The notes under the pieces are model-generated. The model searched no databases, was not told where the DNA came from, and saw only the letters and a program-made list of their open reading frames with translations. Below, piece by piece: positions 10,301 through 56,822 of a stretch of DNA of 64,000 bases. Position numbers and translations under genes: made by a program. Source of the DNA: Macrostomum lignano (taxonomy: Eukaryota); assembly GCA_002269645.1 (NCBI GenBank), contig NIVC01001255.1, positions 124,001-188,000 of the forward strand, in the 5' to 3' direction. Every line of letters starts with the position of its first letter. Position 1 is the first letter of the stretch.

Positions 10301-13300
10301 TCTAGAAGTGTTTTTATAATACTGTAGCTAGTAGTGATCATAATGCAACCGCATTCTGGCAGCTGTTCCGGATGATCAGAGAGGCAGTCAGAAAAGACTG
10401 ACCAGCAGTCAGCTGTCGTTGACCTATTTGTCCTATGAATTTGCGAAAATAAAAATGACTGTCCTTCTATGCTTGACAGGGAGGCATTCATAGACTCATT
10501 CCCCCTCTACATTTCCATCTGTCTGTCTTCTAAAGCCGTTTTACTCAGCACTGTTGCAGAAGTGGAGAGGCCTGCGTTTGCGTCTATAGAAAAGCAGAAC
10601 AGGTGCTTCAACAGGCCCAGTTGCTATACCGAAAAAAAGCATAATTTACTGCAATTCCAATGGACAGAAAGAAGTACATGCAGCCGCGCCAGGTGATACT
10701 TTCACTCACAGCTCTCCATCTTCAGGTGGCACTTTTGCTTGTCCATTGGAAACTTTTTCAAGTCCATGTTGCATGAGAGCTTCACGGTGAGTCTGCAAGA
10801 TTTATGGATAAAAATGTGAGGGAAGTCGGCTGGAAGGTGGGAAGCTATGTTCTGCGTATGGCCTGATGCTGAGCCGAAACTCATCCTAAACGCGCCTCAT
10901 CTCATGCCTCTTAAACATGTCTCATAACAGTAGAACTACCAAAGGTTGGGGAAGGTTGTTGCGCACCTTCTCAAACAAGAATCAAGTCGCCAGCCCACCG
11001 GACAGTCGAGATATTCGACAATTCTGCCAGAAGGTCGGATTTTTCCCATAAGCGCCAGTGTATTCAGTACACCCCTGTGCGCCAATCAGCACTGCGCCTC
11101 AGTGCAGCCTTGCCAAGCCTCCAAATTTCATCAGCACGTCGACCACATGTGTCTGCATCAGCTCTGACTTTGTTAGTCACTGGCCTTCACCCAGGCGGAG
11201 CTTCTGCACCTTCAACGGGTGACCAAGAAAGTCAGAGCTAATGCAGACATACCCATACACTGTACACATCGGCAGCTAATGAGCGATCAAACGCCTTGTG
11301 CGTGACCTTTCTTTTTTAAAGCTATAAATCAATAATGAAAGGTACCTCCCCCCAGAAAGACACATAAAACGAACTCACTTTTGACTAAAAGTCACCTCGC
11401 CGCTCGGTTTAACCCTTAGCAACAAATTTGGAGTGGTGATCTCGTGAAAATTGCCTCGTTTCTCGTTGATAAAGTACAAATCAGGGACCCACAATTCGGA
11501 TTTCTTTGAGTTTAGGGTTAGCGACTCGTTGTAGCCCCGATGGGCGTATGCCAACCGCGTGTCGTTCCAGTACTGCCTCAGGAACATGTTGACGGAATAG
11601 TCCTGAGAACGAGGATATTGGGCAGAAATTTTAATTTATTCTTGCTTGAAAAAATCAGGAAAGGATTAAAAAACAGATGCCTCGATAAAGCATGATTTCT
11701 CCTGATAAAAATAAATTACATTTTCACTAGCAATAGTTTTTCCGGTAACGAAAAATTGAAGCAATCTCAGTAATGACAGTCAGATCCAGAATCTCAGCAA
11801 TGACAGTCAGATCCAGAATCTCAGCAATGACAGTCAGATCCAGAATCTCAGCAATGACAGTCAGATTCAGAATCTCAGCAATGACAGTCAGATTCAGAAT
11901 CTCAGCAATGACAGTCAGATTCAGAATCTCAGCAATGACAGTCAGATCCAGAATCTCAGCAATGACAGTCAGATTCAGAATCTCAGCAATGACAGTCAGA
12001 TTCAGAATCTCAGCAATGACAGTCAGATCCAGAATCTCAGCAATGACAGTCAGATCCAGAATCTCAGCAATGACAGTCAGATTCAGAATCTCAGCAATGA
12101 CAGTCAGATTCAGAATCTCAGCAATGACATTCAGATTCAGAATCTCAGCAATGACAGTCAGATTCAGAATCTCAGCAATGACAGTCAGATCCAGAATCTC
12201 AGCAATGACAGTCAGATCCAGAATCTCAGCAATGACAGTCAGATCCAGAATCTCAGCAATGACAGTCAGATCCAGAATCTCAGCAATGACAGATCCAGAA
12301 TCTCAGCAATGACAGTCAGATCCAGAATCTCAGCAATGACAGTCAGATCCAGAATCTCAGCAATGACAGTCAGATCCAGAATCTCAGCAATGACAGTCAG
12401 ATCCAGAATCTCAGCAATGACAGATCCAGAATCTCAGCAATGACAGATCCAGAATCTCAGCAATGACAGATCCAGAATCTCAGCAATGACAGTCAGATCC
12501 AGAATCTCAGCAATGACAGTCAGATTCAGAATCTCAGCAATGACAGTCAGATTCAGAATCTCAGCAATGACAGTCAGATTCAGAATCTCAGCAATGACAG
12601 TCAGATTCAGAATCTCAGCAATGACAGTCAGATTTAGAATCTCAGCAATGACAGCTGCTGGTAAGATTCAGAGAATGAGCACATCCCAGCAGACAGACAG
12701 AAGTCAGATATGGCGGTTGATTAAAAGTACACGATTCCGCGGTCAGTCTGCTCACTACACTACAGTGATGAGCATGAATACTAAGTGCTCAATCTCTCCA
12801 GTTTCCCACATATGCCTGCTAAAACTTCTGGCAAACACAAACAAAAGGCCTCAGAGCAGGGCATTTAGGAGCACTTCAGATAAATCTGCTTGGAAATGGC
12901 TGCGGCATTCAGCTCCCAAGTTTCTCCCTGCATGCCCTCCTAAACTCTTCCCTACTTCCAAAAGGCTTTGCCGCCGGTTGAGAAGTTAAATGTGACGCCA
13001 ATTTCCCACAGAAAACTGGTGTGGCTGTGCACTGCAGGTCGCAACTCATTTGCCACTTCTAAGAAACGAAGTTTACCCAGGGACCGACGGAAACTACTCA
13101 AACTAAGAGATCTCACAGCCTATTAGCTCATTCCGAGCGAGTGTGTACTCAATCAGAAATACGATGATTTCTATCGCTAGAAAATCGTTCTCACCATATC
13201 GATTACGTTGATGGAACTCATCGCGTGAACCATTAGTGACACTCTGACAATGGTTGTTTTGCCTGCAATGTTTCGGTTGCAAAAGAAACACTGTAATTTA

Positions 13301-16094
13301 TTGCATTGGACACTGACACAAATTGAGCTACCGACACAAGAGTTGATGTCATACATGTACTCAACTATTTTAGCAAGCACCAATTTTACTAATGCTATTC
13401 GTAACAGTGCACCAACGAGATCGAATTCTCTTCACATATAGAGAAAGTGAAGTTTAGAAGAGCTTAGCCATTCACTACTTGGCCCGCACAGTAGGGCTAG
13501 GTACTCTTAGAGCGCCGAGCTGCACTCGATGAAGATGGGACGGCAGGAGAAACTTGGGGGAACCCCCCGTCCCCCTTTACCCCGGTCGCCGGGTCAGCCG
13601 TAGCGCCAGGCTCTTTGTCACGCGCCCAGACCGCCTCCCCAATGCTGTTCTCTCAATTAACTGCGACCCAAGCCAGAGACGGAGATTCTCAATCTGCAAT
13701 CCAGACTCCCTCAATTCTCTCTGCACGTAATTCTCTGGTGAGTCTCTTGAGACAACCCCAACCACCAATCCCCAACCCGGGGGATAGGTGCAGGAGACAA
13801 GTTCATACAGTCTAACGGACGAAGGAGCTGAGGGGAAGGCAAGGGGAGAATCTGGGGAAGTGGTAAATCAATGCAAGAAAATCTGGTTGGTCTGAGTCGT
13901 CTCATCCACGACGACTGTGTTGCGATTTTCCTTGAGAAATAACCTTCGAGGAGGGGAAGGTAAAGAGAGAGAGACAAAGGGAAGGGAGAAAGATGCATAG
14001 CGAAGGAGAGAGATGCAGGGAAAGGAAGAGACATTCAGGGAATGGGAGAGAGATGCAGGGAAAGGGAGAGAGATGCAGGAAAAGGGAAAGAGATGCAGGG
14101 AAAGGGAAAGAGATGCAGGGAAAGGGAGAGAGATGCATAGCGAAGGAGAGAGATGCAGGGAAAGGAAGAGACATTCAGGGAATGGGAGAGAGATGCAGGG
14201 AAAGGGAAAGAGATGCAGGGAAAGGGAGAGAGATGCAGGGAAAGGGAAAGAGATGCAGGGAAAGGGAGAAAGATGCAGGGAAAAGAAGAGACATGCAGGG
14301 AAAGGGAGAGAGATGCAGGGAAAGGGAGAGAGATGCAGGGAAAGGAAGAGAAATGCAGAGAGAAGGGAGAGAGATGCAGGGAAAGGGAGAGAGATGCAGG
14401 GAAAGGGAGAGAGATGCAGGGAAAGGGAGAGAGATGCAGGGAAAGGAAGAGAAATGCAGAGAGAAGGGAGAGAGATGCAGGGAAAGGGAGAGAGATGCAG
14501 AGAGAAGGGAGAGAGATGCAGGGAAAGGGAGAGAAATGCAGAGAGAAGGGAGAGAGATGCAGGGAAAGGGAGAGAGATGCAGAGAGAAGGGAGAGAGATG
14601 CAGGGAAAGGGAGAGAGATGCAGGGAAAAGGAGAGAGATGCAGGGAAAGGGAGAGAGATGCAGGGAAAGGAAGAGACATGCAGGGAAAAGAAAGGGAGAT
14701 GCAGAGAGAAGGAGAGAGATGCAGGGAAAGGAAAAGAGATGCAGAGAGAAGGGAGAGAGATGCAGGGAAAGAAAGAGAAATACAGAGAGAAGGGAGAGAG
14801 ATGCAGAGAGAAGGAGAGAGATGCAGGGAAAGGAAAAGAGATGCAGAGAGAAGGGAGAGAGATGCAGGGAAAGAAAGAGAGATGCAGGGAAATGGAGAGA
14901 GAAGCAGGGAAAGGGAGAGAGATGCAGGGAAAGGGAGAGAGATGCAGGGAAAGGAAGAGAAATACAGAGAGAAGGGAGAGAGATGCAGGGAAAGGAAGAG
15001 ACATGCAGGGAAAGGGAGAGAGATGCAGGGAAAGGGAGAGAGATGCATAGCGAAGGAGAGAGATGCAGGGAAAGGGAGAGAGATGCAGGGAATGGGAGAG
15101 AGATGCAGGGAAAGGGAGAGAGATGCAGGGAAAGGAAGAGACATGCAGGGAAAGGGAGAGACATGCAGGGAAAGGGAGAGAGATGCAGGGAAAGGGAGAG
15201 AGATGCAGGGAAAAGGAGAGAGATGCAGGGAAAGGGAGAGAGATGCAGGGAAAAGGAGAGAGATGCAGGGAAAGGGAGAGAGATGCAGGGAAAGGGAGAG
15301 AGATGCAGGGAAAGGGAGAGAGATGCAGGGAAAGGGAGAGAGATGCAGGGAAAGGGAGAGAGATGCAGGGAAAGGAAGAGACATGCAGGGAAAGGGAAAG
15401 AGATGCAGGGAAAGGGAGAAAGATGCAGGGAAAAGAAGAGACATGCAGGGAAAGGGAGAGAGATGCAGGGAAAGGGAGAGAGATGCAGGGAAAGGAAGAG
15501 AAATGCAGAGAGAAGGGAGAGAGATGCAGGGAAAGGGAGAGAGATGCAGAGAGAAGGGAGAGAGATGCAGAGAGAAGGGAGAGAGATGCAGGAAAAGGGA
15601 GAGAGATGCAGGGAAAGGGAGAGAGATGCAGGGAAAGGGAGAGAGATGCAGGGAAAGGGAGAGAGATGCAGGGAAAGGGAGAGAGATGCAGGGAAAGGGA
15701 GAGAGATGCAGGGAAAGGGAGAGAAACGAAGGAGCTGCATTCCTAGTGCAATTGACTGTCATCAGCACGCCCCCTCACCTGTGTACATTGACGGCGGAAT
15801 CGATTTGTCATATTTCTCAAATATTTTCGCAATAAAATCGCGCATCGTGTCATTGTTGTGGCCAATTCTGAAGTGGTCATTGATTTCAATTGAACGATTA
15901 AAATGCCAGCTTTGAGTATTTTCTAGTATTTTGAGTACTTAAAAAATCGAACAGACTGCTCACCGCAGCTTAATGTCGGCTTGCAGTCCTCCGCAGAGGC
16001 AGGCAAATGCCAGGCAGCTGGCAACGAAAAAGTGGCCCAATTGGCGACGAAGTCTTTCTCGACTGCCGCCGCTGATGCGACCGGCGGGCGGCAT
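4333..16094 (-). CDS. Cys-loop ligand-gated chloride channel subunit (GluCl/glycine-receptor-like), 9 exons, 501 aa
   Basis: Exons 16094-15964, 15867-15779, 13262-13195, 11602-11379, 10792-10710, 10085-9942, 8791-8562, 5585-5397, 4680-4333. All are GT-AG and phase-compatible, total 1506 nt. Motifs: N-terminal hydrophobic segment, [28 protein letters not shown], Cys-loop [16 protein letters not shown]2 [18 protein letters not shown] (PAR anion filter), M3 SYIKAIDVWM, M4 [15 protein letters not shown]. Confidence 0.93.
4750..5090. repeat. (CTCCT)n pentanucleotide microsatellite
   Basis: Near-perfect CTCCT run in the last intron of the channel gene. Confidence 0.95.
6395..6700 (-). mobile_element. 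tRNA-derived SINE with CORE-like central segment
   Basis: Minus strand: B-box GGTTCGATTCTCG, then GTGTCCTTGAGCAAGACACT...CAGTTCACCCAGCTGTAAAATGGG (resembles the CORE-SINE domain), ending in a (TAT)n tail. The A box was not clearly resolved. Confidence 0.65.
8846..9862. repeat. 24-bp minisatellite with ~92-bp higher-order blocks
   Basis: Unit CAGATGCTACCGCTCTCTCCTCCC; periodic variant units (CTTTCTCCACCCCCATATG) in the first third. Confidence 0.95.
10090..10300 (-). mobile_element. Degenerate tRNA-derived SINE copy
   Basis: B-box-like GGTTAGATTCC on the minus strand. Shares GGTTGGCCCTCATGGG with ~23815 and CTGACTTTCT with ~36577. Confidence 0.4.
11764..12655. repeat. 27-bp minisatellite
   Basis: Unit ATGACAGTCAGAT(C/T)CAGAATCTCAGCA, ~33 copies, with occasional 22-bp deletion units; intronic. 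Confidence 0.95.
13975..15725. repeat. 20-bp purine-rich minisatellite
   Basis: Unit GAGATGCAGGGAAAGGGAGA over ~1.75 kb; source of the long spurious ORFs at 13868-15915. Confidence 0.95.
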
Positions 16095-19666: not shown

Positions 19667-22600
19667 TCAGTCTTTCTTCAATTTCGAGCCTTGGAACTTT
19701 GCCTTGCCGGCGATAGCCTTGGACTCGGACGGCTGGGCCCCGTTGCTGAGCAGTAGTTCCTCGATATTCGCCTGATTTGCTGACACCACCGCACCAACCT
19801 TGGCGCCGCCTTTGAATAGCACGAATGTCGGCACCGCCCTGACGCTGTACTCGTCAGCGACAGCCTGCAGGTACATTGCGATAGTTTAGTAAATTGTAAA
19901 GACTTTCTCATGTAAATAACTTTAACCCAGACGCAAATGACAAGTAAAAACGATCATTCAGGGACTCCACTGACAGATTTTTTTTCCATCTGATAAGAGC
20001 AGGCATACTGCCTTGATTTTATTGAACTAATTAACTGACTAAGATACAGACTCTATCTTATCAGATTGCCAGTTCAACTGCCCCTCGCCACGCGTACATC
20101 AATGTACATCAATACTCTCTGCCCCAAGTGACCAACTAAGCATTTCTGCACTTGATAAACCAAGGACTATTGCACTTGATAAACCAAGGACTATTGCACT
20201 TGATAAACCAAGGACTATTGCACTTGATAAACCAAGGACTATTGCACTTGATAAACCAAGGACTATTGCACTTGATAAACCAAGGACTATTGCACTTGAT
20301 AAACCAAGGACTATTGCACTTGATAAACCAAGGATTATTGCACTTGTTAATAAAGAATATATTGCACTAGATAAGCCAAGGATTATTGCACTTGATAAGC
20401 CAAGGATTATTGCACTTAATAAGCCAAGGATTATTGCACTTTGATAATAAGGAATATTGCACTAGATAAGCCAAGGATTATTGCACTTGATAAGCCAAGG
20501 ATTATTGCACTTTGATAATAAGGAATATTGCACTAGATAAGCCAAGGATTATTGCACTTTGATAATAAGGAATATTGCACTTGATAAACCAAGGATTATT
20601 GCACTTGATAAACCAAGGATTATTGCACTTGATAAACCAAGGATTATTGCACTTAATAAACCAAGGATTATTGCACTTGATAAACCAATTGGATCACTGA
20701 ACTTGATAAGCCAAGGATTATTGCACTTTGATAATAAGGAATATTGCACTAGATACGAGCGTAAGCCAAGGATTATTGCACTAGATTAGAAAGGGCTATT
20801 GCACTAGCTGAGACATCGATTTTTGGACTTGATGAGTAAAGGATTATTGCACTAGCTGAGACATCGATTTTTGGACTTGATGAGTAAAGGATTATTGCAC
20901 TAGCTGAGACATCGATTTTTGGACTTGATGAGTAAAGGATTATTGCACTAGCTGAGAAGCTGATTCTTGCGCTGTCTAAAAAAGAGATTATTGCGCTCGC
21001 TGAGACGTGGATTGTTGCACAACCTGAGAAAGCGATTATTGCATTAGCGGAGGTAACATTTGCACTAGCTACTTGCTGTCTCGCGGATGCTTGCTATCTG
21101 GATGATGCTTGCTCTCGAGGGGGGATACTTGCTATTTGGGAGGGGGGGTACTGGCTACATGTATGGGATTCTTTCTATCCAGGGATGCTTGCTATTTAGG
21201 GATGCTTGCTATCTGCAGGATGCTTGCTATCTGGGTGGATGCTTCTATCTGGGGGATGCTTGCTATCTGGGTGGATGCTTCTATCTGGGGGATGCTTGCT
21301 ATCTGGGTGGATGCTTCTATCTGGGGGATGCTTGCTATCTGGGGTGATGCTTGCTATCTGGGGTGATGCTTGCTATCTGGGGTGATGCTTGCTATCTGGG
21401 GGATGCTTGCTATCTGGGGTGATGCTTGCTATCTGGGGTGATGCTTGCTATCTGGGGTGATGCTTGCTATCTGGGGTGATGCTTGCTATCTGGGGTGATG
21501 CTTGCTATCTGGGGTGATGCTTGCTATCTGGGGGATGCTTTGTATGAGCATTAGGGGATGCTTGCTATCTGCGGTTGCTTACTTTTGGGAGGGGGTGCTT
21601 GCTATCTGGGGGGGGATGCTTGCTGTCTTGGGAATATTTTCTATTTAGATTGAGCTATATTTTGTTGTCTGTTTGCTAATTTTAAAGAAAAAGTGATTCA
21701 TAGCAAACATCTTTGTCCGTGACCATTTTACACGAATAAGCTGATTTTTAAAAGTGAAGAAGGAATTGGTACTTAAGAAAATGTGCTTTTTTAATTGTTT
21801 TCCATTAACTATTTTTTCTCCTTGCTTACTGGGCGTAAAAATTCTATACAAATATTTTTCAGGCATGCTATCTAGCACTCCCAAGTCAGTGCAACCAATG
21901 ACCGCCCGCTTGTATCTTGAAGGATGCAGAATAACCGCTTTTTTCGTGAGATAATATCAGTTATTACAATTCCTTCATCAAATCAGCAAAAATCAGTGAA
22001 GAATAATTTGGCGTTTCTCTTGGCCAAAGCCTTCAATTTGTAATTATAGGTGTCGTATATGTTGAGCAAAGTAGCTCGTATTGTGGCCAAATTGCATAGA
22101 ATCAAACAATAATTTTTAGTCTGTGCAATAGGAAATTGAATTTAAAAAATGTTCAATATAGTCGCATCAGCCTGTCCACCCCACCTCATACACTATAGCT
22201 TTTACTCAGAGTAGTATGAGAAAGAAACTGCAACCGGGAATAAAGAAACATGAACCTAGTACTTTGTTTTTAACTTCACCTGTTTTTATCAAGCAATAAC
22301 ACTCAACCGGTATCCCTCATCTGTTATCTCTCTCAACCGGTATCCCTCAACCGGTCTCCCTCCTAACTAGTATCCCTCTTGACTGGTATACCTCAACCGG
22401 TATCTCTCTCAACCGGTATCCCTCCTAACTAGTATCCCTCTTGACTAGTATCCCTCAACCGGTATCTCTCTCAATTGGTATCCTTCTTAACTGGTATCTC
22501 TCAACCGGTATCCCTCTTAACTGGTATACCTCAACCGGTATCCCTGAACAGGTATCCCTCAACCGGTATCCCTCAACCGGTATCCCTCAACCGGTATCCC

Positions 22601-25034: not shown

Positions 25035-25350
<316 letters not shown>

Positions 25351-25358
25351 GCACACGA

Positions 25359-27227
25359 ATGCCCCGCTCAACAACAGCCAAGGAAGCAGTCAAAGCGGCT
25401 CCGTTGCTGGGCAAGAAGTCGCTGCTTTCGGTCGTGCTGTGCACCAATGCTTTCGCCGCGTTGCTAACGCTCACCATTTCCATGGCAACGGACTTTTGGA
25501 TAGTGACTTTCGAATGGGAGGCGGAGCGGAACGGGACGCACAGGGTGACCGCGATCCACTCGGGACTCTGGCGCCTCTGCTCGGAGCAAAAGTTTGTGCC
25601 GAGCAGCAAGAAGACAGTGTTCATCTGGACCAAGGATGCAGGTTAGCAACTTTCCTACTGTTTTATTTTTAGGTTGAGATTCACACAGTTTTCAACTTTT
25701 ACGGAACCTGTCATCGCAGTCACATTCAACGGGCACCGAACCAACTGCACGAGGTACAACAGCTCGCATATTGCTGACGGCATCACCTTCAAGTACCGGC
25801 GCGATGGAGGCGACATGAAACCGACTGACATTCGTGAGTTGAGCCACTTGAGCGTGTGAATTGAGTCTGTAAATGGAGTGTGTGAATTGAGTCTGTAAAT
25901 GGAGTGTGTGAATTGAGTCTGTGAATGGAGTGTGTGAATTGAGTCTGTGAATGGAGTGTGTGAATTGAGTCTGTGAATGGAGTGTGTGAATTGAGTCCGT
26001 GAATGGAATGTGTGAATTGAGTCTGTGAATGGAGTGTGTGAATTGAGTCTGTGAATGGAGTGTGTGAATAAAGCTTGTGAATGCAGTCTGTGAATAGAGT
26101 CTACGAACGAGTTTGTGATTGAATCTGAAAATGATCCATCGAGGTTCACGAGACTGTGAACAAAGTTTGTGAATATGTGAATGGAGGATAGGAATGGAGT
26201 TTCTGAACCGATTCTGTGAACAGATCAGTCCGTGAATAGACTCTTTCTTATCCCGCACGCCAGAAGCTCAACCACAGAATTCTGTGAGCTCAACAACCGG
26301 CATAGCAACCAAATAAACTTGCTTAATTTTCAGACATCGTGCAGGCCGCCAGTCCTTTGCCTCTGGCCGGCTCCATCCTCGCCATTTCCGCCTCCATCGC
26401 CGCTCTTCGCTCCGCCTACCGGCCGCAGTCAACCCGGCCGGTGCTTCTCGGCGGCGGCCTCTATGTGATATCGGGTAAGCGAGATAGTTTCTGAATAGCT
26501 GCGTCATGCTACTTACTGTCAGTAGAGTAATTTGCGTATCAACTTTTCTCATACAGATTAGCAAAAGGCGCTTTAAAACATGATTTTTTCTCCACCAGAA
26601 AAATATAGGACATCCGCTCACACCAGATGAATAAAATTAACATCCGCTCTCTACCAGTCAATTTCAACAAAAATCCGCTCTCTACCAGTCAACTCAAACA
26701 AGCACATCCGCTCTCTAGCAGTCAATTCAAACAACAAATCATCTCTCTTCTGATTAATCACAATCGACATCCGCTCTCTACCAGTCAATTCAAACAAGCA
26801 CATCCGCTCTCTACCAGCCAATTCAAACAAAAATCCGCTCTCTACCAGTCAACTCAAACAAAAAATCCTCTCTCTACCAGTCAATTCAAACAACACAAAT
26901 CCTCTCTCTTCTGATTAATCACAATTGACATCCGCTCTCTACCAGCCAACCACCGCTCTCTCCCCACCCAAATCGCCCCCAGGCCTGTTTCTCCTCATCG
27001 GTATAGTGCTCTACATCGGCAACGTGTCTCAGGCATTCGACAGCTCCTCTGGCGGCGTCTCCTCGGACAACAAGTATGCCTACGCCTACGGCTACTCGTT
27101 CCACCTGTTCATTGTGGGCTTCAGCCTGTCCGAGACGGCCGGGGTGCTGGCCGTGTACCTGCACCTGGCTCGGGCTCGGCACTCAGACTCCAACAACGCC
27201 AGCGGCTGCAGCAACAGCAGAGTCTGA
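25359..27227 (+). CDS. Claudin-fold tetraspan protein, TARP/stargazin (CACNG)-like, 4 exons, 260 aa to the first stop
   Basis: Exons 25359-25641, 25720-25833, 26334-26474, 26983-27227, all phase 1 and GT-AG, total 783 nt. Motifs: [16 protein letters not shown], second ECL1 Cys (TNCTRY), [42 protein letters not shown] (compare CACNG2 YSYGWSF..AEMVGVLAVHM). The frame reopens after TGA to 27587 (see findings). Confidence 0.85.
25855..26070. repeat. 26-bp minisatellite
   Basis: Unit TGTGAATTGAGTCTGTGAATGGAGTG. Confidence 0.9.
26640..26960. repeat. Degenerate ~30-bp tandem repeat
   Basis: ATCCGCTCTCTACCAGTCAATTCAAACAA variants in TARP intron 3. Confidence 0.85.
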
Positions 27228-27862
27228 GTCAGAAATCCGAAAGGCAGCGCCAGCTGCAACGCCTTGATGGCTAATGATGATGAGGATCAGCTCCGTCGGC
27301 AGCCGGAGGACGAGGCAGCCGTCGACACCCCCGACTGGCCATCGCCGCCGCCACTGGTCGGAGATAAGCCGCCGCTGAGCATGTCGTGGCATTCCGCGAT
27401 GGCCGCTGGTAGGTCTTTAGCCGCCGACGCCGCCCCGACGAGGTCCTGGAGTCACGCGGCCGGTGCCAGCTGCCAGTACCTGCCGCAGGAGGAGTCCCAG
27501 CTGCTGCCGACAACAGCGACAATGTCGTCAACGATGTGTCGCTGTTCGATTGGCAGCGGCAAGCTGGTGAAGACGACTCTGGTGTGAAAACTTTCTCAGT
27601 TTGTTTGTTTGCGAGGACTGACCCGCAGCTACCGGGGGCGAGAAGTCACGGCCCGTTCTGGTGACCCCTGAGCACCCGCGAACAGACACGCTCTCATGCA
27701 CCAAAGACTACTCAAGTAGAAGGAAAAGTTTTGGGAAATTGGAAAATTTTAGGAAGCAGGTTTTTTCCTAAAAATACATTTCGGAGATACGAGGCTTTCA
27801 TTTTTTTCAGCACAAAAAATTGTTATTGCATTAGATAGGAGGCAGCTAAGACCCACAGATAT

Positions 27863-28184
27863 TAGAATAACTAGATGGGCAACTTGGCAAATTGGCGTGT
27901 AAGCTACTTTCAGTTCAGTAGTAAGTTAAACTGAAGCATTTTAATGTATTTTACAAGCCAAGGCTCATTTATTGGCTCTTACCCCCAGCTTAAACCCTCC
28001 AACCTTTCCACACTACCCCCGCCCCGCCCCAATTTTTATTGCCTTCCTCGGAATTCCAGCCTAAAGCTGCCATGTACATTTTAGTGGACTGGCCAATGTA
28101 CATTATTGCTGGACCAATTAGCAAGTTGTTTACGCCTGAAAGCTTGGGCTTCTAAACTTATCAAAGTCATTTCAGCTGGTTTTA
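27863..28184 (+). mobile_element. Dispersed repeat (MITE-like), copy 1, truncated by a downstream insertion
   Basis: Reverse-complement match to 56480-56822; contains the TIR CTACTTTCAGTTCAGTAG. Confidence 0.7.
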
Positions 28185-29147
28185 TGTGGAATCAGGGACG
28201 GTGCTAGGACCGAGTCCACCCAGGCCACCACCCAACAGACAAGTCTTCGGGAGTGCGCAGAAAAAGTTGGAATTAGCGAAAAAAGCTTGGGTTACTACTA
28301 AAAGCAGTCCGAGAGAGGGGAAACCCCGAAGTCTACCGAAATGGCTTATTATTGGAGCGAGTCTGGAAGGCTTGTTTCCGAGGGCGAGACTCCAGGCAGG
28401 AAGACCGTCTACCGGCTACAAACCCAAAGGTATCGCCTATCCAGCTCAATATTGGAGGCCAGGCCAAGGGGTCGGGAAGGGGCACAAGGGGCAAGAGGAC
28501 CCGGACTCAGCCAGTATCCCCGAATCGGGCGAACTCATTCCCCAGGACACCAATCCACTGTCAGGATGAGAGCCAGAGGCACTTAGGCAGGGAGACAACC
28601 AGAGGAGCCAGCAGATGGACCAAGGACAGCGCAGGATGGACCGGGCAGGGAGGGCAGAGCTCATAACTCTGGAGAATTCTAGCGGCAATCTAAGGCCTTA
28701 CATTAATAAAACCAGTACAGTAATGGGGATAAAAACAGGACGGAGGAGCACCTGAACCCTACTAGCAGGTGGAGGGACCCTGCTTCCCGGGGCACAGCCT
28801 CAGGGCTGGCATCAACTGGGCTCTACCGTACACCTTCGTGAATGGTCATTCTTTCCTGCAGGGCGGGTACGACCGGGGGGCTCAAGTCCCATTCTAGCCA
28901 CACTGCAGTCCAGAGTACACACTCACTCCAGGTACATCCCCCCCTCTAAACCAAGGCCGAGGGCCAAATAATTGGAATGCACGAAAAAGAATGGTTGGGG
29001 TTATTTTTAGAATGGGCACAGCCCCTCTGGGGCGGACCCTTAGTTAATTGGGCTAGCCGAAGCCAGGCCAATCGGATTGCGCACAACCCTTAGACAAGCT
29101 ACCAGAGAGGCAACCAGGGTAAAAACAGTCAGAGACCGTCTAGTTAC
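28185..29147. mobile_element. Possible solo LTR (~960 bp)
   Basis: GC-richer block starting TGT and ending TTAC (no terminal CA), flanked by TTTA at 28181-28184 and 29148-29151. Internal AATAAA near 28705. It interrupts the dispersed repeat. Confidence 0.4.
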
Positions 29148-30009
29148 TTTAATAATAGTGCTAATATATATATTTTGATATGTTGTGTCTTTCTTATAGG
29201 TCTATTGATTTTCATAAAGTTTTTCGTTTAGAAAAATAGGATTTCCATGTCAATTTTTAATACTCTACGTACAATCGGACATGTACTGTGCCTAAAAATC
29301 TTAATCAATTCTATCATTCTTAGCTTAATGATAGAATCATAAAAATAGATTCATAAAACCAATGAGTCGATCGAGTTGAGCCATTTTTAAATGATTTTTA
29401 GGCACACGACGTGAACGAAGACTAAAAAAATAGCATAGAATCCCAAGTTTCTAAACGAAAAGCTTAACTAACATCAAACGAACATCATCGTTGTCGTACA
29501 CACGCGCTCACGCAGGGTGCACAGCGGCCAAGTAAGTGAGCGAGTAACAGGTTTGAGCTGATGCCACCAGTTCGCACTCCTGAGCTCTGTGCTAGCAGAT
29601 TCGGGCATATTTTATCTTTATAACCATTCTAGGCTCGATAAACACTACTGAAATGTTGGGGTTTATCAGTAGCTAATAAAGACATTAATAGTTTTAATAT
29701 TTACAACACTCGTTATATTTTTTCCTAATTAACGCGCTGTTCGCACCAACTGATGCTTTGTGCTTTTTTATTTATGATTATAATTTATGGTTACGGATGC
29801 ACTCGCACCGAATATGAATCTTTCTACTGAGAAGTATTGTCAAATTCTGTACAATCAATTATTCATTGTCACTACGAGCTATGTGCTATGCCTTTCACTT
29901 CCTTAGTAAACTATAAACTCGATTTCTCATCCATCTCTATTTCCTGTTCTATCTTCATACATCTATCTATTCTAACCCCATATCGCTATTATCTCCCCAT
30001 CTCCATTGT

Positions 30010-30700
30010 TACCGCATATCTACTCTCATCTTTTATCCAATCTCTCGCCATATCTATTCTCACCACATATCTTTTCTCATCACATTTCTATTCTCACCAC
30101 ATATCTTTTCTCACCCTATATCTATTCTCACCACATATCTATTCTCATCACATATCTTTTCTCATCACATATCTATTCTCACCACATATCTTTTCTCTCC
30201 CTATATCTATTCTCACCACATATCTTTTCTCTCCCTATATCTATTCTCACCACATATCTTTTCTCTCCCCATATCTATTCTCACCACATATCTTTTCTCA
30301 TCACATATCTATTCTCACCACATATCTTTTCTCACCCTATATCTATTCTCACCACATATCTATTCTCATCACATACCTTTTCTCATCACATATCTATTCT
30401 CACCACATATCTATTCTCACCACATATCTATTCTCTCCCCATATCTATTATTACCCCATATCTAATCTCATCTTATATCCAATCTCTTGCATTATCTATT
30501 CTCACCACAAGTCTATTCTCATCGCATGTCTATTCTAACCAAATATCTATTTTCACCTTATCAATTCTATCTCCATATCTATTCTCTCCCCATATCTATT
30601 CTCTCCCCCATATCTATTCTCTCCCCCATATCTATTCTCTCCCCAAATCTATTCTCACCTCATATCTATACCTATCAGCCATTCTCTTTCTTGGTGTAGC
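30010..30700. repeat. Degenerate ~17-bp pyrimidine-rich minisatellite
   Basis: TATCTATTCTCACCACA / TATCTTTTCTC variants. Confidence 0.9.
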
Positions 30701-32769: not shown

Positions 32770-35700
32770 CTAAGCCTCGTCATCCGGCTGACTGCGCAGG
32801 CGCAGCCTCGCGAAGTCCTCGAATACCAGATCCTCGTCTCCGGCAGGTTTTGCCGCGGTCTTGTCGGGCTGGTCCTGACCGTCCAGCTGGATCAGGTTCC
32901 CCTCGGCCGGTGGTGCCTCGGAGCCGCCGGCGTCTCCCGCATCGGGTGTCGCCGTCGCGGGTTCCTCAGTCTCGTCGTCAACCTCGTCCAGCTCGTCCGG
33001 CGGTTTCGGGTGGGTCAGCACAAACGGCAGCTCCAGGCAGACGTCGGACGAACCAAAGCCGAGCACCAGGCGGACCTTGACTCGATAGTTGACTACGATG
33101 CCGAGGTTCTCCTTGGACTGGCTGGAGTCCTTCATGATGGTGCTGCTGGCCAGGTTCGTGTCCTCGTGCTTCAGCTGACCATCGAGTGCCAGGCCGCGTT
33201 TGTCGCGGTTGTTCGCCAGCAGCGGGCAGACGTGGAAGACGCGGCACCAGCCAGTCTGGCCGGGCCCGATCGGGAAGCCCTCCTCCGATTCGAGCTCGGC
33301 CACGTTGCACTTGTAACTGTTGGGGCTGAACAGGCAGATGTCAGCCACTTGTCGAACTGAGATTCGAACTTTTTTAGCCGTCTTTCCGGTGTTGTTGTCA
33401 ACGAGTAGATTGACCGCGATCGACTCGCCGTGGTAGTACTTCTCCTTGTCGAGGCTGGCCTCCAGGCGCAGGGTGCCTGCGCTCATGCGGAACTCCTTCG
33501 TTACCTGAGAAATGGCAAGATCGCAAGGCGCGATCAGACTCACACTTTGAACTTTTCATGATCGCTGTGACCTGCTCTGGTTTCTCTTACCCATGACTGC
33601 TCACACCCCTACCCTGATTGCTCATACCCCTAACCCTTATTGCTCACACCCCTACCCTGATTGCACACACCCCTACCCTGATTGCTCATACCCCTACCCT
33701 GATTGCTCACACCCCTATCCATGATTGCTCACAACCCCTACCCTGTTTGCTCACAACACCCCTACCCTGATTGCTCACAACCCTACCCATGATTGCTCAT
33801 ACCCCTACCCTGATTGCCCACACCCCTACCCTGATTGCTCATACCCCTACCCTGATTGCTCACACCCCTACCCATGACTGCTCACACCCCTACCCTGATT
33901 GCTCATACCCCTACCCTGATTGCTCACACCCCTATCCCTGATTGCTCACACCCCTACCCTGATTACTCACACCCCTACCCATGATTACTCACACCCCTAC
34001 CCATGATTACTCACACCCCTACCCTGATTTCTCACACCCCTACCCTGATTGCTCACACCCCTACCCTGATTTCTCACACCCCTAACCTGATTGCTCACAC
34101 CCCTACCCTGATTGCTCACACCCCTACCCTGATTTCTCACACCCCTACCCTGATTGCTCACACCCCTACCCTGATTTCTCACACCCCTAACCTGATTGCT
34201 CACACCTCTAATCTGGCTGCTCATATCTATAGACTTGTTGCTCATATCTCTAATCTTGTTGGTCATATCTATACTCTGATTGCTCATATATATACTCTGG
34301 TTGGTCATATATATACTCTGGTTGGTCATATCTCTAATCTGACTGATCATATCTATACTCTGGTTGCTCATATCTATAGTCTGGTTGCTCATATCTCTAA
34401 TCTGGCTGCTCATATCTATACTCTGGTTGCTTATATCTCTAACCTGGCTGCTCATATCTATACTCTGGCTGCTCATATATATATACTCTGGTTGGTCATA
34501 TCTATACTCTGATTGCTCTTATCTATACTTTGGTTGCTCATATCTCTAATCTGGTTGCTCATATCTATACTCTGGTTGCTCCGAGTCCACATTTACAGCT
34601 TAATTTCAAAGAAAACCCTTTTAGTGCTTTAAGTTGTCCCGTTTACAGGTTGTCCTCAAGCGGCACTTCAAAGCCAGTGGAACCGCGGCCTGTTTGCAGC
34701 CGCCTGCACATTCAGCTCTGGATAGTCAAGTACAGAGCTGCAGATGGGGCAAAACAATTATAGTTGTTGTATCCCTGTAGTCAATAGGCGGCATTCTGTC
34801 ACTCTCAGCATAGTGGATCCCATCGGGATGGGCGCAGAGCATTCAAGCCTGAATCAGCATCAACCGCCCTCAGCATCCGGCACAACCCCCTCCGCCCCAT
34901 CCATCCCCTTCCTTCGTCTCCAATGCAAATTTTGCTATTTGATGTTTTTATGAGCTCTTGAAAGCGATTGCGCACATTTTTCTGTCCCTACCCTGTGCCC
35001 TTATCTCTGCTTATCCATTTCTCTTCATAGATTTAAGCCTGTATATGTTTCAAACCCCTACGAGTATTTCCCATAGCATCAAGCGTTTATTATTTAGCAA
35101 AAAATGAATTTCCAATAGTAGGCAGTCAGCCAAGTCAATGTGTGTGACGCAGCTGCTAGATAAAAGATAGACACATTTAGCTTGTGTCTTGAAGAAGCAT
35201 AAAATTCTATTTGTTCGGCAGCCGAATTACCACCCCTGATTTCGAAGCTGCGCTGCATACCGAAGCTATAGCTCTTGACAGTAGGCAGAAGTTGCTTTAA
35301 AAGATCTTCCTTCAAGGTCTGAGGCTTGGTTTGAGCAGCAATCTCGTATTTGAGCCGCGCGAGTCGGAAAATACACTGTCGAAAAAAACTGTCTTCAAAA
35401 AATTGGCGATAGCGGACCTGACTTTCATTGGCACCCACTCTTTCCTTCGATTGTTGGCTTTCATGGACGGAAGAATCATACGAAAAATTTACCTATAAGA
35501 CTTTTTTAACGCGGAGCTGGGTCGGACCCGTTGTCGCACTTCGCTAGTCCAAATCTTTTATAGATAAATGGTAAAGATAAAAAGATTCCGATCGATAAAG
35601 TAGACTAAGAGCCACCCTTTGCTGCGCCAGTAAGCAACTTCTCTCGGACTAAAGACTATTCTGAATTAACCATTGTAGTTCGAATGTTGCTACCTGGTTA

Positions 35701-36914
35701 ACGAAACTCGTAAATAAACGATTTTGTCGCAACTGTTCAGCAATCTGCGGAGTCCCTCTGCTGAACTCTTGGCTTTACAAAGTGTCAGACATGCTCGATG
35801 GGTTCGTGTCTGGAGGAGAGACTACGATCACCGATGGCTTTCTAAACTTTTTGAGTCATGTGGCAGTGTGAGTTAGACGGGGCGTTGGGGTAAAATGGCC
35901 TCTACTGCTCACCTCAGCAGTGGGCTGCGGCCCGGGCTCCTCTGGCGCATAGGTGAGCTTCCGGATGGCCAGGGTGACAGTGCTCCTTTTGTGCGTCTTC
36001 CCGTCAGCTTGGTCGGCAACGTAAGTCTTTAACTCGTAGTCCACGCCGCACGGCTTGCCACCGTCGTTAGCCCCGGCTGCAGGGTGACGGACGCCGGGCT
36101 CTGCTGGGGCGGCAGCTCAAAGTAGAATGGATGCGCGTTCTCGCCAAGCTTCTTCATCAGGCGCTTCTGCAGCCGGGTCGGCGGTCTGGTGTCCTCCCCC
36201 AACGGCGGGCAGACCTGCATGCAGGCGATGTACAGGTCCTTGCGGAATGTCAGGCCCAGGACGTCGAGGTCCTCGCGTCCGTAGCGGAATGCGGCGAGAA
36301 CGTGGACGAAAACCTCCAAAAATGTAAGCGGGGTGAGGTGGTGCTAGTTCGATGACGCAGCACTCACACAGGATGCACACGTGACAACTAAAGTACGATT
36401 TCAGTGCTTTAGTACTTTAGTTTACCGTGGGTGCACACACAGTGATCACGATCATATTAATAATAGTAATTGCAAGAAGGTTGCGGGCACCCAGGTGCAA
36501 CGTCTTCGGCGAAATCGTCCCACATCCAGCTCCGAGGCGATTCTGCCATTCCGCTCACACAGGGTGTACAGCAGTCCTGACTTTCTGGAATGTGCACTCT
36601 CTGTGCCTTGTGGATTGGCCATCATGGCTGTGAATCGCACGACACAAGGAATTCCAACCAAGGGTCGTGACGCGAGAGTCAGACGCGTTTATCGCTGATC
36701 AGTTTCTCACCTTGCGATCCTTGATGTAGTCTGGATCCACAAGCACAACCCCATCGATTGGGTCGACTCGGGTCAAATGATCGACGAAGTCTCTCTTGCT
36801 GAGGTAAGTAGTAATCTTGTTGTTGGGCGAATTTTTCTTGAACACTCGAGTGCCACTGGATGGAATTCGTTTTGGATCGCTGCTGCTCTGGTCTGCCGCG
36901 CCGCTGGTTGCCAT
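32770..36914 (-). CDS. ARRB: Beta-arrestin (non-visual arrestin), 3 exons, one apparent 1-nt deletion
   Basis: Exons 36914-36711, 36313-35913, 33504-32770. Motifs: [72 protein letters not shown], clathrin box LIQLD, AP2 motif [13 protein letters not shown]. The exon sum is 1340 nt; restoring one G in the run at ~36071-36074 gives QPG(A)[14 protein letters not shown]. Confidence 0.93.
33590..34570. repeat. 21-bp minisatellite with two consensus halves
   Basis: TGATTGCTCACACCCCTACCC grading into TGGTTGCTCATATCTATACTC; arrestin intron 2. Confidence 0.9.
36465..36700 (-). mobile_element. tRNA-derived SINE in arrestin intron 1
   Basis: Minus strand: B-box-like GGTTGGAATTCC, body AAGGCACAGAGAGTGCAC..GCTGTACACCCTGTG..GGAATGGCAGAATCGCCTC, TATTATTA tail. 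Similar to 50727-51075. Confidence 0.6.
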
Positions 36915-56433: not shown

Positions 56434-56822
56434 CTACTTTCAGTTCAGTAGCAAAGAAGAATACATAAGCTATTTTATAAAAATAAAACCAGCTGAAATG
56501 ACTTTGATCAGTTTAGAAGCCCAAGCTTGCAGGCGTAAACAACTTGCTAATTGGTCCAGCAATAATGTACATTGGCCAGTCCACTGAAATGTACATGGCA
56601 GCTTTTAGGCTGGAAGTCCGAGAAAGGCAATAAAAATTGGCTGGCGGGGGTGGGGTAGTGTGGAAAGGCGCGGTTGGAGGGTTTAGGCTGGGGGCGGGGG
56701 GGGGTAAGAGCCAATATGCATTGGCTTTGATAAAAATACACTACAATGCTTCTGGTTAACTCACTACTGAACTGAAAGTAGCTTACACGCATATGCGCTA
56801 AGTGGCCCATCTAGTTATTCTA
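56434..56822 (-). mobile_element. Dispersed repeat / MITE-like element, copy 2
   Basis: 18-bp inverted repeats CTACTTTCAGTTCAGTAG (56434-56451) and CTACTGAACTGAAAGTAG (56764-56781); body matches 27863-28184. Confidence 0.7.

What the first reader, a model, noticed from the sequence alone, without database searches (positions are those of the whole stretch)
27225..27587. TARP-like gene: in-frame TGA followed by 119 open codons ending in a TARP-type PDZ ligand (KTTLV*) - candidate stop-codon readthrough
Seen in the sequence: exon 4 reads ...AGA GTC TGA GTC AGA AAT... The same frame stays open from 27228 to 27584 with GC-rich, coding-like codons (ANDDEDQLRRQPEDEAAVDTPDWPSPPP...) and ends GKLVKTTLV-TGA. 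Established: type I TARPs such as stargazin end in -RRTTPV, a class I PDZ ligand needed for synaptic anchoring of AMPA receptors. Inference: the functional C-terminus lies beyond the first stop. This would give a short 260-aa form with no PDZ ligand and a 380-aa form with one, i.e. a translational switch for receptor anchoring. Alternatives: a nonsense allele or dying paralog; a base-call error; or compensating assembly indels, since another frame across 27182-27274 reads as a plausible Q-rich stretch ([28 protein letters not shown]). The UGA-G context is not the classic leaky UGA-CUAG.
Basis: partly seen in the sequence, partly recalled or inferred. Interest (0 to 1): 0.75.

Follow-up and report, generated by a model that had tools for sequence, protein, structure and literature searches.

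The report
Stargazin-like gene interrupted by a stop codon
An invertebrate gene for a glutamate-receptor helper protein (a TARP, the stargazin family) has one TGA stop codon 120 codons before its normal, family-typical end; the stop looks like a young mutation, and deliberate read-through by the ribosome is possible but not shown.

Summary
A four-exon TARP-like gene (25359-27587, + strand) has an in-frame TGA at 27225-27227. It is followed by 119 open codons ending KTTLV-TGA.

The 119 codons are real coding sequence in the TARP frame:
- Open frame plus codon periodicity occurs in 0.04% of shuffles.
- GC3 is 0.76 against 0.79 in the upstream CDS, and the signal stops at 27587.
- The end, KLVKTTLV, matches the terminal [RK][RK]TTPV of TARPs from bee, centipede, annelid, acorn worm and amphioxus.

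In ten TARP last exons fetched from metagenomes the tail runs uninterrupted to RRTTPV or RKTTPV. The stop here is therefore the exception.

The T of the TGA has two properties. It is the only base that breaks an (AGAGTC)2.5 microrepeat. It also completes a perfect 10-bp inverted repeat (27181-27190 / 27220-27229). That is the footprint of a template-switch mutation, probably AGA to TGA.

I found no SECIS element, no leaky UGA-C context, no downstream RNA structure and no convincing intron.

The short form ends -SRV, which is itself a class 1 PDZ ligand.

No close relative exists in any collection I could search, so conservation of the stop could not be tested.

Estimates: young nonsense allele about 0.45, programmed readthrough about 0.28, base-call error about 0.1.

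The parts
25359..25641 (+). Exon 1 (ATG to the GT donor). Encodes the N-terminus, TM1 and the SGLWRLC motif of extracellular loop 1.
   Evidence: The N-terminus and GLWRxC align to TARP gamma-7 and gamma-5.
25720..25833 (+). Exon 2, the rest of extracellular loop 1. It follows a 78-nt intron.
   Evidence: GT-AG borders and consistent phases.
26334..26474 (+). Exon 3 (TM2 to TM3).
26983..27224 (+). Exon 4 up to the first stop. Covers the end of TM3, the YAYGYSF family motif, TM4 and a 16-residue tail ending NSRV.
27225..27227 (+). In-frame TGA. The next base is G.
27228..27584 (+). The 119 open codons in the TARP frame. This is the genuine ancestral C-terminal tail.
   Evidence: open frame, GC3 0.76, periodicity, codon usage. 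(terminal motif shared with TARPs of five phyla).
27570..27584 (+). K-T-T-L-V, the canonical TARP C-terminal class 1 PDZ ligand. Relatives have [RK]TTPV.
   Evidence: Chance of [KR]TT.V from composition is about 3e-5.
27585..27587 (+). Second TGA, the ancestral stop. GC content and codon periodicity collapse after it.
27213..27224 (+). N-S-R-V, the C-terminus of the 260-aa form. It fits the class 1 PDZ pattern.
   Evidence: In this tail, 6.7% of random truncation points give such an end.
27181..27190 (+). Upstream arm ACTCAGACTC of a perfect 10-bp inverted repeat. It lies in the codons for H-S-D-S.
   Evidence: I1.
27220..27229 (+). Downstream arm GAGTCTGAGT of the inverted repeat. It contains the TGA, and T27225 pairs with A27185.
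   Evidence: With A at 27225 no perfect stem longer than 3 bp covers that position.
27219..27233 (+). Microrepeat AGA GTC TGA GTC AGA, which is (AGAGTC)2.5 with the T of the TGA as the only off-pattern base. It holds the only two AGA codons among the 20 Arg codons of the ORF.

Best explanation
This is an orthologue of the canonical TARP (stargazin / CACNG) family. Its ancestral reading frame is the 380-codon one, ending in the family's PDZ ligand (KTTLV).

On the sequenced haplotype that frame is interrupted by one derived TGA. The most likely origin is a young nonsense change. Either an AGA (Arg) codon inside an (AGAGTC)n microrepeat became TGA, or a small in-frame piece was copied in. In both cases the cause would be template switching within a quasi-palindrome whose other arm lies 40 nt upstream.

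Shown:
- The downstream 119 codons are real TARP tail.
- The stop sits in a perfect inverted repeat and breaks a direct repeat.
- Relatives have no stop there.

Inferred:
- The change is recent, because the tail has no further stop or frameshift.
- Ribosomes mostly terminate at 27225. The stop is in the last exon, so no nonsense-mediated decay is expected. The main product is then a 260-aa TARP with a 16-residue tail ending -SRV.
- Only the ordinary low-level near-cognate leak at UGA yields the full-length protein.
- The allele may be heterozygous or polymorphic in the population.
For: Evidence that the extension is coding:
- Open frame P = 0.03, and open frame plus frame score P = 0.0004.
- GC3 is 0.76 against 0.79 in the upstream CDS, and third-position A is 0.09 in both.
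- Periodicity is present throughout and stops at 27587.
- Codon-usage log-likelihood favours the TARP frame in every sub-segment.

Evidence that it is the family's tail:
- TARPs of Saccoglossus, amphioxus, Capitella, Apis and Strigamia end TVRKTTPV, FLRKTTPV, SYRRTTPV, TLRKTTPV and TLRRTTPV (File S1 of PMC7653359). The window ends KLVKTTLV.

Evidence that the stop is the exception:
- Ten TARP last exons from metagenome contigs were read. Nine run uninterrupted from TM3/TM4 through a tail of about 120-220 aa to RRTTPV* or RKTTPV*. The tenth (L021) runs off its contig, still open.

Evidence that the T is derived and mutational:
- It is the only off-pattern base of AGA GTC TGA GTC AGA.
- The two flanking AGA codons are the only AGA among 20 Arg codons.
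- It completes a perfect 10-bp inverted repeat, 27181-27190 / 27220-27229. That occurs in 0.15% of shuffles and covers 0.5% of window positions.

Evidence against a readthrough signal:
- The +4 base is G. A C after UGA promotes readthrough and CUAG confers very high readthrough (PMC12233894).
- The 120 nt from the stop fold no better than shuffles, z = -0.68.

Evidence on taxon:
- The protein lacks the signature shared by bee and centipede TARPs. It is closest to the acorn-worm and human gamma-7 sequences.
- It is therefore probably not from Pancrustacea, the only clade with abundant readthrough (PMC5100048).

That paper treats a recent nonsense substitution as the standard alternative that leaves a coding signature downstream.
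Against: - A deleterious truncation of a gene whose PDZ ligand is conserved across Bilateria should be rare in a reference genome.
- The truncated protein happens to end in a class 1 PDZ ligand (-SRV). Only 6.7% of truncation points in this tail do that. This hints that the short form is tolerated or selected, as a two-isoform readthrough gene would predict.
- UGA is the leakiest stop codon.
- The ancestral state (AGA) is inferred from a 15-nt repeat pattern only.
- The inverted-repeat statistic was computed after I saw the fold. A second perfect 10-bp inverted repeat lies in the same tail, so the local background may be higher than the window average.
- No read data, population data or orthologue could be obtained.
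Confidence: 0.45

Rival explanations
1. Programmed stop-codon readthrough. The TGA is fixed and maintained. Most ribosomes stop, giving a 260-aa form ending -SRV. A regulated fraction inserts a near-cognate residue (Arg, Trp or Cys) and continues to the canonical KTTLV end. The result is two TARP isoforms with different tails and different PDZ ligands.
For: - The extension has an intact coding signature and the conserved terminal motif.
- UGA is the leakiest stop (PMC13170385; PMC12233894).
- The short form also ends in a class 1 PDZ ligand, which only 6.7% of truncation points give.
- The neighbouring arrestin gene shows no frame disruption, so the local assembly looks sound.
- Readthrough affects 5-6% of stops in flies and mosquitoes (PMC5100048).
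Against: - The +4 base is G, and there is no CUAG.
- No RNA structure follows the stop.
- The predicted hairpin has its 5' arm upstream, so it is already melted when the stop reaches the A site (inference).
- The T looks like a recent templated mutation in otherwise undecayed repeats.
- The protein lacks the bee/centipede TARP signature, so the host is probably outside Pancrustacea. Outside that clade readthrough genes are few.
- No TARP appears in the readthrough supplements I searched.
- No paper in the library links stargazin to readthrough.
Confidence: 0.28
2. Base-call or consensus error. The true codon is a sense codon, most simply AGA, and the gene encodes only the 380-aa protein.
For: - One substitution restores a perfect (AGAGTC)2.5 repeat and an Arg codon.
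- The site lies in an inverted repeat. By general knowledge such repeats can cause polymerase or library artefacts.
- Everything downstream is intact.
Against: - Substitution errors are rare in consensus assemblies (general knowledge).
- The neighbouring arrestin exons are intact.
- The four TARP exons have clean splice sites and phases.
- There is no homopolymer at the site.
Confidence: 0.1
3. A short in-frame intron (exitron) removes the TGA from the mRNA. Candidates are 27222-27284 (63 nt) and 27222-27290 (69 nt). The result joins ...SNSR to DQLRR... or LRRQ....
For: Several GT...AG pairs with lengths that are multiples of three exist. Intron 1 of this gene is only 78 nt.
Against: - The only usable donor is AGA|GTCTGA. 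The gene's real donors are GTTAGC, GTGAGT and GTAAGC.
- The candidate acceptors are purine-rich (gatgatgag, gaggatcag) and lack a pyrimidine tract.
- The stretch 27228-27290 keeps codon bias in the TARP frame, +4.8 bits against -9.3 and -20.2 for the other frames.
- In the metagenome relatives the ORF runs open from TM3/TM4 through the whole tail.
Confidence: 0.07
4. A-to-I RNA editing of the last base of UGA. UGI is read as UGG (Trp), so the edited mRNA encodes the full-length protein.
For: The TGA lies in a perfect 10-bp stem, with its A paired to U.
Against: - Ten base pairs are far shorter than typical ADAR substrates.
- The 5' neighbour of the A is G, the least favoured context (general knowledge).
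- The 200-nt fold is no more stable than shuffles, z = -0.78.
Confidence: 0.03
5. The stop is avoided in a different way. Either the true protein passes through the Q-rich frame ([26 protein letters not shown]) by two compensating indels, or the UGA encodes selenocysteine.
For: - The Q/R-rich frame is open from 26915 to 27271.
- It loosely resembles the basic membrane-proximal stretch of relatives, for example Capitella KKQQRQHL.
Against: - Codon usage favours the TARP frame over the Q-rich frame in 27186-27271, +4.8 against -2.7 bits. Most codons in the TARP frame end in C, as in the rest of the gene.
- Two errors within 90 nt would be required.
- No SECIS element or any other Rfam family was found, either at gathering thresholds across the whole window or at E <= 10 in 27100-30500.
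Confidence: 0.02

Closest known systems
Canonical bilaterian TARPs ending [RK][RK]TTPV: vertebrate type I stargazin/CACNG2, Apis STG1, Strigamia SMAR006032, Capitella CapteG156450, Saccoglossus Sakowv30018222m, amphioxus Brafl1|64581
   Same: - Four-TM claudin-type protein with GLWRxC in loop 1.
- YxYGxSF before TM4 and GVLxVYL in TM4.
- A long disordered tail whose C-terminus is basic-T-T-x-V.
- In the metagenome last exons read, the ORF likewise runs from TM3/TM4 through the tail.
   Different: - An in-frame TGA lies 16 residues after TM4. None of the relatives read has one.
- The terminal motif is TTLV, not TTPV.
- The middle of the tail has no significant similarity to other tails.
Vertebrate type II TARPs (gamma-7 and gamma-5)
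   Same: These are the best sequence matches among solved structures: gamma-7 at 8.6e-19 and the GluA2-gamma-5 chimera at 1.7e-15. The literature places most invertebrate TARPs nearer type II (PMC7653359).
   Different: From memory (not checked here), gamma-5 and gamma-7 end in atypical ligands (-SSPC and -TSPC) and have tails of about 70 residues. Here the long form has the type I-like TT-x-V end.
Functional stop-codon readthrough genes of Drosophila and Anopheles (Jungreis et al., PMC5100048; Dunn et al., PMC3840789)
   Same: A UGA first stop, a long in-frame second ORF with a protein-coding signature, and a neuronal gene with a disordered C-terminal extension.
   Different: - Stop conservation is untested.
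- The context is UGA-G, not UGA-C.
- No downstream structure was found.
- The host is probably outside Pancrustacea.
- The stop shows the marks of a recent local mutation.
Quasi-palindrome (template-switch) mutations
   Same: One base makes an imperfect inverted repeat perfect while departing from the local direct-repeat pattern.
   Different: The ancestral sequence is inferred, not observed. Only one event is seen, so chance cannot be fully excluded.

Membership tests
TARP / CACNG subfamily of the claudin superfamily | Four-transmembrane PMP22/claudin domain | tested here: met
   Pfam Claudin_2 at 5.3e-17 (62.7 bits, cut-off 29.1) and PMP22_Claudin at 2.6e-12.
TARP / CACNG subfamily of the claudin superfamily | Closest relatives are TARPs rather than claudins or VDCC gamma-1 | tested here: met
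   Solved-structure search: gamma-7 8.6e-19, gamma-5 1.7e-15, gamma-2 2e-13, gamma-8 1e-12. Gamma-1 scores only 0.019.
TARP / CACNG subfamily of the claudin superfamily | Conserved motif Y-S-Y-G-W-S-F before TM4 (PMC7653359) | tested here: met
   The window has Y-A-Y-G-Y-S-F. That is 5 of 7 identical, including the most conserved Ser.
TARP / CACNG subfamily of the claudin superfamily | C-terminal class 1 PDZ ligand, canonically [RK][RK]TTPV | tested here: inconclusive
   K-T-T-L-V is present, but only beyond the in-frame TGA. The annotated-style 260-aa form ends -SRV. That fits the class 1 pattern but not the canonical motif.
TARP / CACNG subfamily of the claudin superfamily | Last exon encodes the end of TM3, TM4 and the whole tail without interruption | tested here: not met
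   This holds for the metagenome TARP last exons read. In the window the frame is broken once, by the TGA at 27225.
TARP / CACNG subfamily of the claudin superfamily | Binds and modulates AMPA-type glutamate receptors | not testable with these tools
   Needs co-expression electrophysiology or co-purification.
Programmed stop-codon readthrough gene | Second ORF in frame with a protein-coding signature | tested here: met
Programmed stop-codon readthrough gene | First stop codon conserved across related species, which excludes a recent nonsense substitution | not testable with these tools
   No close relative was found:
- Protein searches gave nothing.
- The exhaustive search with the extension gave two spurious repeat proteins.
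- The exact look-up was empty.
- Metagenome scans gave only relatives at 33-43% identity.
Programmed stop-codon readthrough gene | Leaky context (UGA followed by C, or UGA CUAG) | tested here: not met
   The stop is UGA but the context is UGA GUC AGA. Context rules come from PMC12233894.
Programmed stop-codon readthrough gene | Stimulatory RNA structure just downstream of the stop (present in a minority of cases) | tested here: not met
   The fold of 27225-27344 gives z = -0.68.
Programmed stop-codon readthrough gene | Alternative explanations excluded (splice variant, SECIS, downstream initiation) | tested here: inconclusive
   No SECIS was found. Only weak splice candidates exist. A recent nonsense substitution cannot be excluded.
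Selenoprotein (UGA = Sec) | SECIS element in the 3' UTR | tested here: not met
   No Rfam match at gathering thresholds in the window. No SECIS at E <= 10 in 27100-30500.
Quasi-palindrome templated mutation | The mutated base converts an imperfect inverted repeat into a perfect one | tested here: inconclusive
   A perfect 10-bp inverted repeat contains the T, and with A the stem is broken. The pre-mutation state is inferred from the direct repeat only.

The most novel reading that the evidence does not exclude
An animal probably outside Pancrustacea uses programmed UGA readthrough in its canonical TARP. This would produce two receptor-anchoring isoforms: a short-tailed one ending in a new class 1 PDZ ligand (-SRV), and a full-length one ending in the ancient KTT(L)V ligand. 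Translation would then set which scaffold proteins the glutamate-receptor auxiliary subunit can bind. The stop would have been born by a template-switch mutation and then retained.
Probability: 0.25. Interest if true: 0.7.

Novelty: new member of a known kind. Interest (0 to 1): 0.4.

Why it matters
For annotation: an automatic pipeline would call a 260-aa TARP and miss the conserved tail and PDZ ligand. The gene should be flagged as a full-length 380-codon ORF with one internal TGA.

For biology: TARP tails control synaptic anchoring of AMPA receptors, so it matters which of two cases applies. A natural truncation allele that keeps a PDZ-type end would be a natural experiment on tail function. 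Regulated readthrough would be a new way to diversify receptor anchoring.

For mutation research: the site is a clean candidate for a nonsense codon made by template switching in a quasi-palindrome.

All three readings can be settled with reads already likely to exist for the sequenced organism.

Tried and rejected
Searches that gave nothing useful:
- Word-indexed protein searches with the 380-aa and 260-aa forms: no hits.
- Exhaustive search of 1.84 billion [15 protein letters not shown] with the extension: two hits, both unrelated repeat proteins.
- PDB search with the extension: nothing.
- Exact look-up of the ORF MANDDED...KTTLV in public assemblies: not on record.
- First metagenome scan with the single protein: no relatives.
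- Synteny through the neighbouring arrestin gene: the one arthropod contig checked (Notodromas) has no TARP next to arrestin.
- Literature: no paper links stargazin or TARPs to readthrough. There is no stg1 in the supplements of PMC5100048 or PMC3840789 that are held as text.
- Smith-Waterman of the extension against six TARP tails: no clearly significant similarity in the body of the tail. The weak resemblance SCQY-LPQEES / SNYTLPREPS is therefore not claimed.

Explanations rejected:
- Selenocysteine.
- The Q-rich alternative frame.
- An alternative genetic code. The same TGA terminates the ORF directly after the conserved terminal Val.
- A paralogue in the window.

One control was uninformative. 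Window segments of similar GC are full of tandem repeats with periods that are multiples of three, and of other exons (fraction >= observed 0.11). I replaced it with shuffles of the extension itself.
Full report
**Observation.**
- The window reads ...AGC AGA GTC TGA GTC AGA AAT... with the TGA at 27225-27227.
- The same frame is open from 27228 to 27584 (119 codons). It ends GKLVKTTLV, followed by a second TGA at 27585-27587.
- I rebuilt the gene on the + strand with exons 25359-25641, 25720-25833, 26334-26474 and 26983 onward. All borders are GT-AG and the phases agree.

**Gene identity.**
- The 260-aa part matches Pfam Claudin_2 at 5e-17 and PMP22_Claudin at 3e-12.
- Among solved structures it matches TARP gamma-7 (8.6e-19), gamma-5, gamma-2, gamma-8 and gamma-3. 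Calcium-channel gamma-1 scores only 0.019.
- It carries SGLWRLC in loop 1 and YAYGYSF where the family has YSYGWSF (PMC7653359).
- There is no paralogue in the window.
- Other genes in the window show this is an animal genome of about 50% GC with many minisatellites. They are a Cys-loop receptor, a thioredoxin-like exon, an intact beta-arrestin and an hnRNP R/Q-like RRM.

**Is the extension coding?**
- The open frame alone occurs in 3% of dinucleotide shuffles. The other two + frames carry 4 and 6 stops.
- GC3 is 0.76 against 0.79 for the upstream CDS, and third-position A is 0.09 in both.
- GC falls from 0.64 to 0.42 in the 357 nt after the second TGA.
- Base composition depends on codon position inside the extension (chi-square p = 0.0009). 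It does not in the next 357 nt (p = 0.41).
- A three-periodic model was trained only on other genes of the window. It prefers the TARP frame, and only 0.9% of shuffles do as well. Open frame plus that score occurs in 0.04% of shuffles.
- A sliding window shows the signal along the whole extension, ending at 27587.
- Codon-usage log-likelihood favours the TARP frame in every sub-segment.
- A first null drawn from other window segments was uninformative, because the window is full of tandem repeats and other exons.

**Is it TARP tail?**
- The body of the tail has no detectable relatives in 1.84 billion [15 protein letters not shown]. The two hits are unrelated repeat proteins. The PDB search also found nothing. 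This is expected for a disordered tail.
- The end is diagnostic. In the family alignment published with PMC7653359, the canonical TARPs end as follows:
  - Saccoglossus: TVRKTTPV
  - Amphioxus: FLRKTTPV
  - Capitella: SYRRTTPV
  - Apis STG1: TLRKTTPV
  - Strigamia: TLRRTTPV
- The window ends KLVKTTLV. From the protein's own composition, [KR]TT.V at a given C-terminus has a probability of about 3e-5.
- A second metagenome scan with a three-sequence alignment returned 20 contigs carrying TARP last exons at 33-43% identity.
- I read ten of them. In nine the ORF runs without interruption from TM3/TM4 through a tail of about 120-220 residues to ARRTTPV* or LRKTTPV*. The tenth runs off the end of its contig, still open.
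- The 380-codon frame is therefore the ancestral gene, and the internal TGA is the exception.
- TGA does function as a stop in this organism, because it directly follows the conserved terminal Val.

**Nature of the TGA: what I could exclude or weaken.**
- Selenocysteine: no SECIS element or any Rfam family was found.
- Intron: the only donor upstream of the stop is AGA|GTCTGA. The in-frame acceptors are purine-rich. The gene's real sites are GTTAGC, GTGAGT and GTAAGC with pyrimidine-rich acceptors. The stretch after the stop keeps codon bias.
- Compensating frameshifts: disfavoured by codon usage.
- Readthrough signals: the stop is UGA, the leakiest stop, but the next base is G. A C after UGA promotes readthrough and CUAG confers very high readthrough (PMC12233894; PMC13170385). 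The 120 nt from the stop fold no better than shuffles.

**Nature of the TGA: a mutational footprint.**
- The local sequence AGA GTC TGA GTC AGA is (AGAGTC)2.5, and the T is its only off-pattern base. The two AGA codons here are the only AGA among the ORF's 20 Arg codons.
- GAGTCTGAGT (27220-27229) is the perfect reverse complement of ACTCAGACTC (27181-27190).
- With A at 27225, no perfect stem longer than 3 bp covers that position.
- A perfect stem of 10 bp or more over a fixed position occurs in 0.15% of shuffles. Such repeats cover 0.5% of the window.
- A base that breaks a direct repeat while perfecting an inverted repeat is the classic footprint of a template-switch (quasi-palindrome) mutation.
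- Caveats: I noticed this after seeing the fold. A second 10-bp inverted repeat lies in the same tail. The ancestral AGA is an inference.
- The hairpin cannot promote readthrough. Its 5' arm is already behind the ribosome when the stop is decoded (inference).

**The logical fork.**
- An untranslated 357-nt tail would soon collect stops or frameshifts.
- So either the TGA is young (a private or polymorphic allele, or an error), or the tail is kept by selection because it is still translated (readthrough).
- PMC5100048 names exactly this alternative and removes it by requiring stop conservation. I could not apply that test.
- No search produced a close relative. The best arrestin match is only 73% identical.

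**Priors.**
- Abundant readthrough, 5-6% of stops, is confined to Pancrustacea.
- The arrestin's best named matches are arthropods.
- The TARP, however, lacks the signature shared by Apis and Strigamia. It is closest to the Saccoglossus and human gamma-7 sequences. The host is therefore probably not a pancrustacean.
- In favour of readthrough: the short form ends -SRV, a class 1 PDZ pattern that only 6.7% of truncation points in this tail would give.

**Verdict.**
- The extension is real ancestral TARP tail with the family's PDZ ligand.
- The TGA is derived and carries a mutational footprint.
- My estimates:

| Explanation | Probability |
|---|---|
| Young nonsense allele | about 0.45 |
| Programmed readthrough | about 0.28 |
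| Base-call error | about 0.10 |
| Cryptic intron | about 0.07 |
| RNA editing | about 0.03 |
| Other | about 0.02 |

- Reads from the sequenced individual, a few conspecifics and one sister species would decide among these.

Noticed in passing
window 25035-25350: An (ACAG)79 microsatellite ends nine bases before the TARP start codon, so the 5' UTR or promoter is almost pure tetranucleotide repeat.
   Followed up: no
window 25850-26127 and 26642-26893: Both larger TARP introns are mostly minisatellite. Intron 2 has a 26-nt unit x 10.8, and intron 3 has a 31-nt unit x 7.9.
   Followed up: no
window 13936-15912: A purine-rich tandem array of about 2 kb (GC skew 0.69, AT skew 0.64). It is open in all three + frames for hundreds of codons, reading as [13 protein letters not shown]-like repeats. 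It is probably a minisatellite, not a gene.
   Followed up: no
window 27863-28185 (+) and 56483-56822 (-): A dispersed repeat of about 330 bp at 87% identity. One copy lies 280 bp downstream of the TARP stop, and the other is inverted 28 kb away.
   Followed up: partly
window 33058-36854 (-): A beta-arrestin gene with at least four intact exons. The best database match is only 73% identical, and the best named matches are arthropods (67-72%). No close relative of this organism is in the collections.
   Followed up: partly
window 4336-11635 (-): Exons of a Cys-loop ligand-gated ion channel. They include the Cys-loop region (...[11 protein letters not shown]...), a TM segment (...[18 protein letters not shown]...) and the C-terminal TM4.
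   Followed up: no
window 19670-19885 (-) and 50450-50677 (+): A thioredoxin-like exon (...VPTFVLFKGGAKVG...) and an hnRNP R/Q-like RRM exon (...[21 protein letters not shown]...DYAFVHF...).
   Followed up: no
window 27194-27206 and 27245-27257: A direct repeat with 51-nt spacing (17 codons, in frame) flanks the TGA. It encodes NASGCSN before the stop and SASCNA after it. This suggests an older in-frame duplication within the tail that spans the stop (D1).
   Followed up: no
window 27512-27521 / 27537-27546: A second perfect 10-bp inverted repeat (AACAGCGACA / TGTCGCTGTT) lies inside the extension. It raises the local background for the inverted-repeat argument.
   Followed up: partly
L002-L019 (metagenome contigs): A series of contigs from related samples carries the same TARP last exon. 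The tail has a variable Gly-rich middle and a conserved 60-residue end (...SVGRDLAGYADTASYNGSVLMRGSPLGSAIYRRSMDSLLLPSDHQSAASLGDVARRTTPV). This looks like host animal DNA from several related species in host-associated metagenomes.
   Followed up: partly
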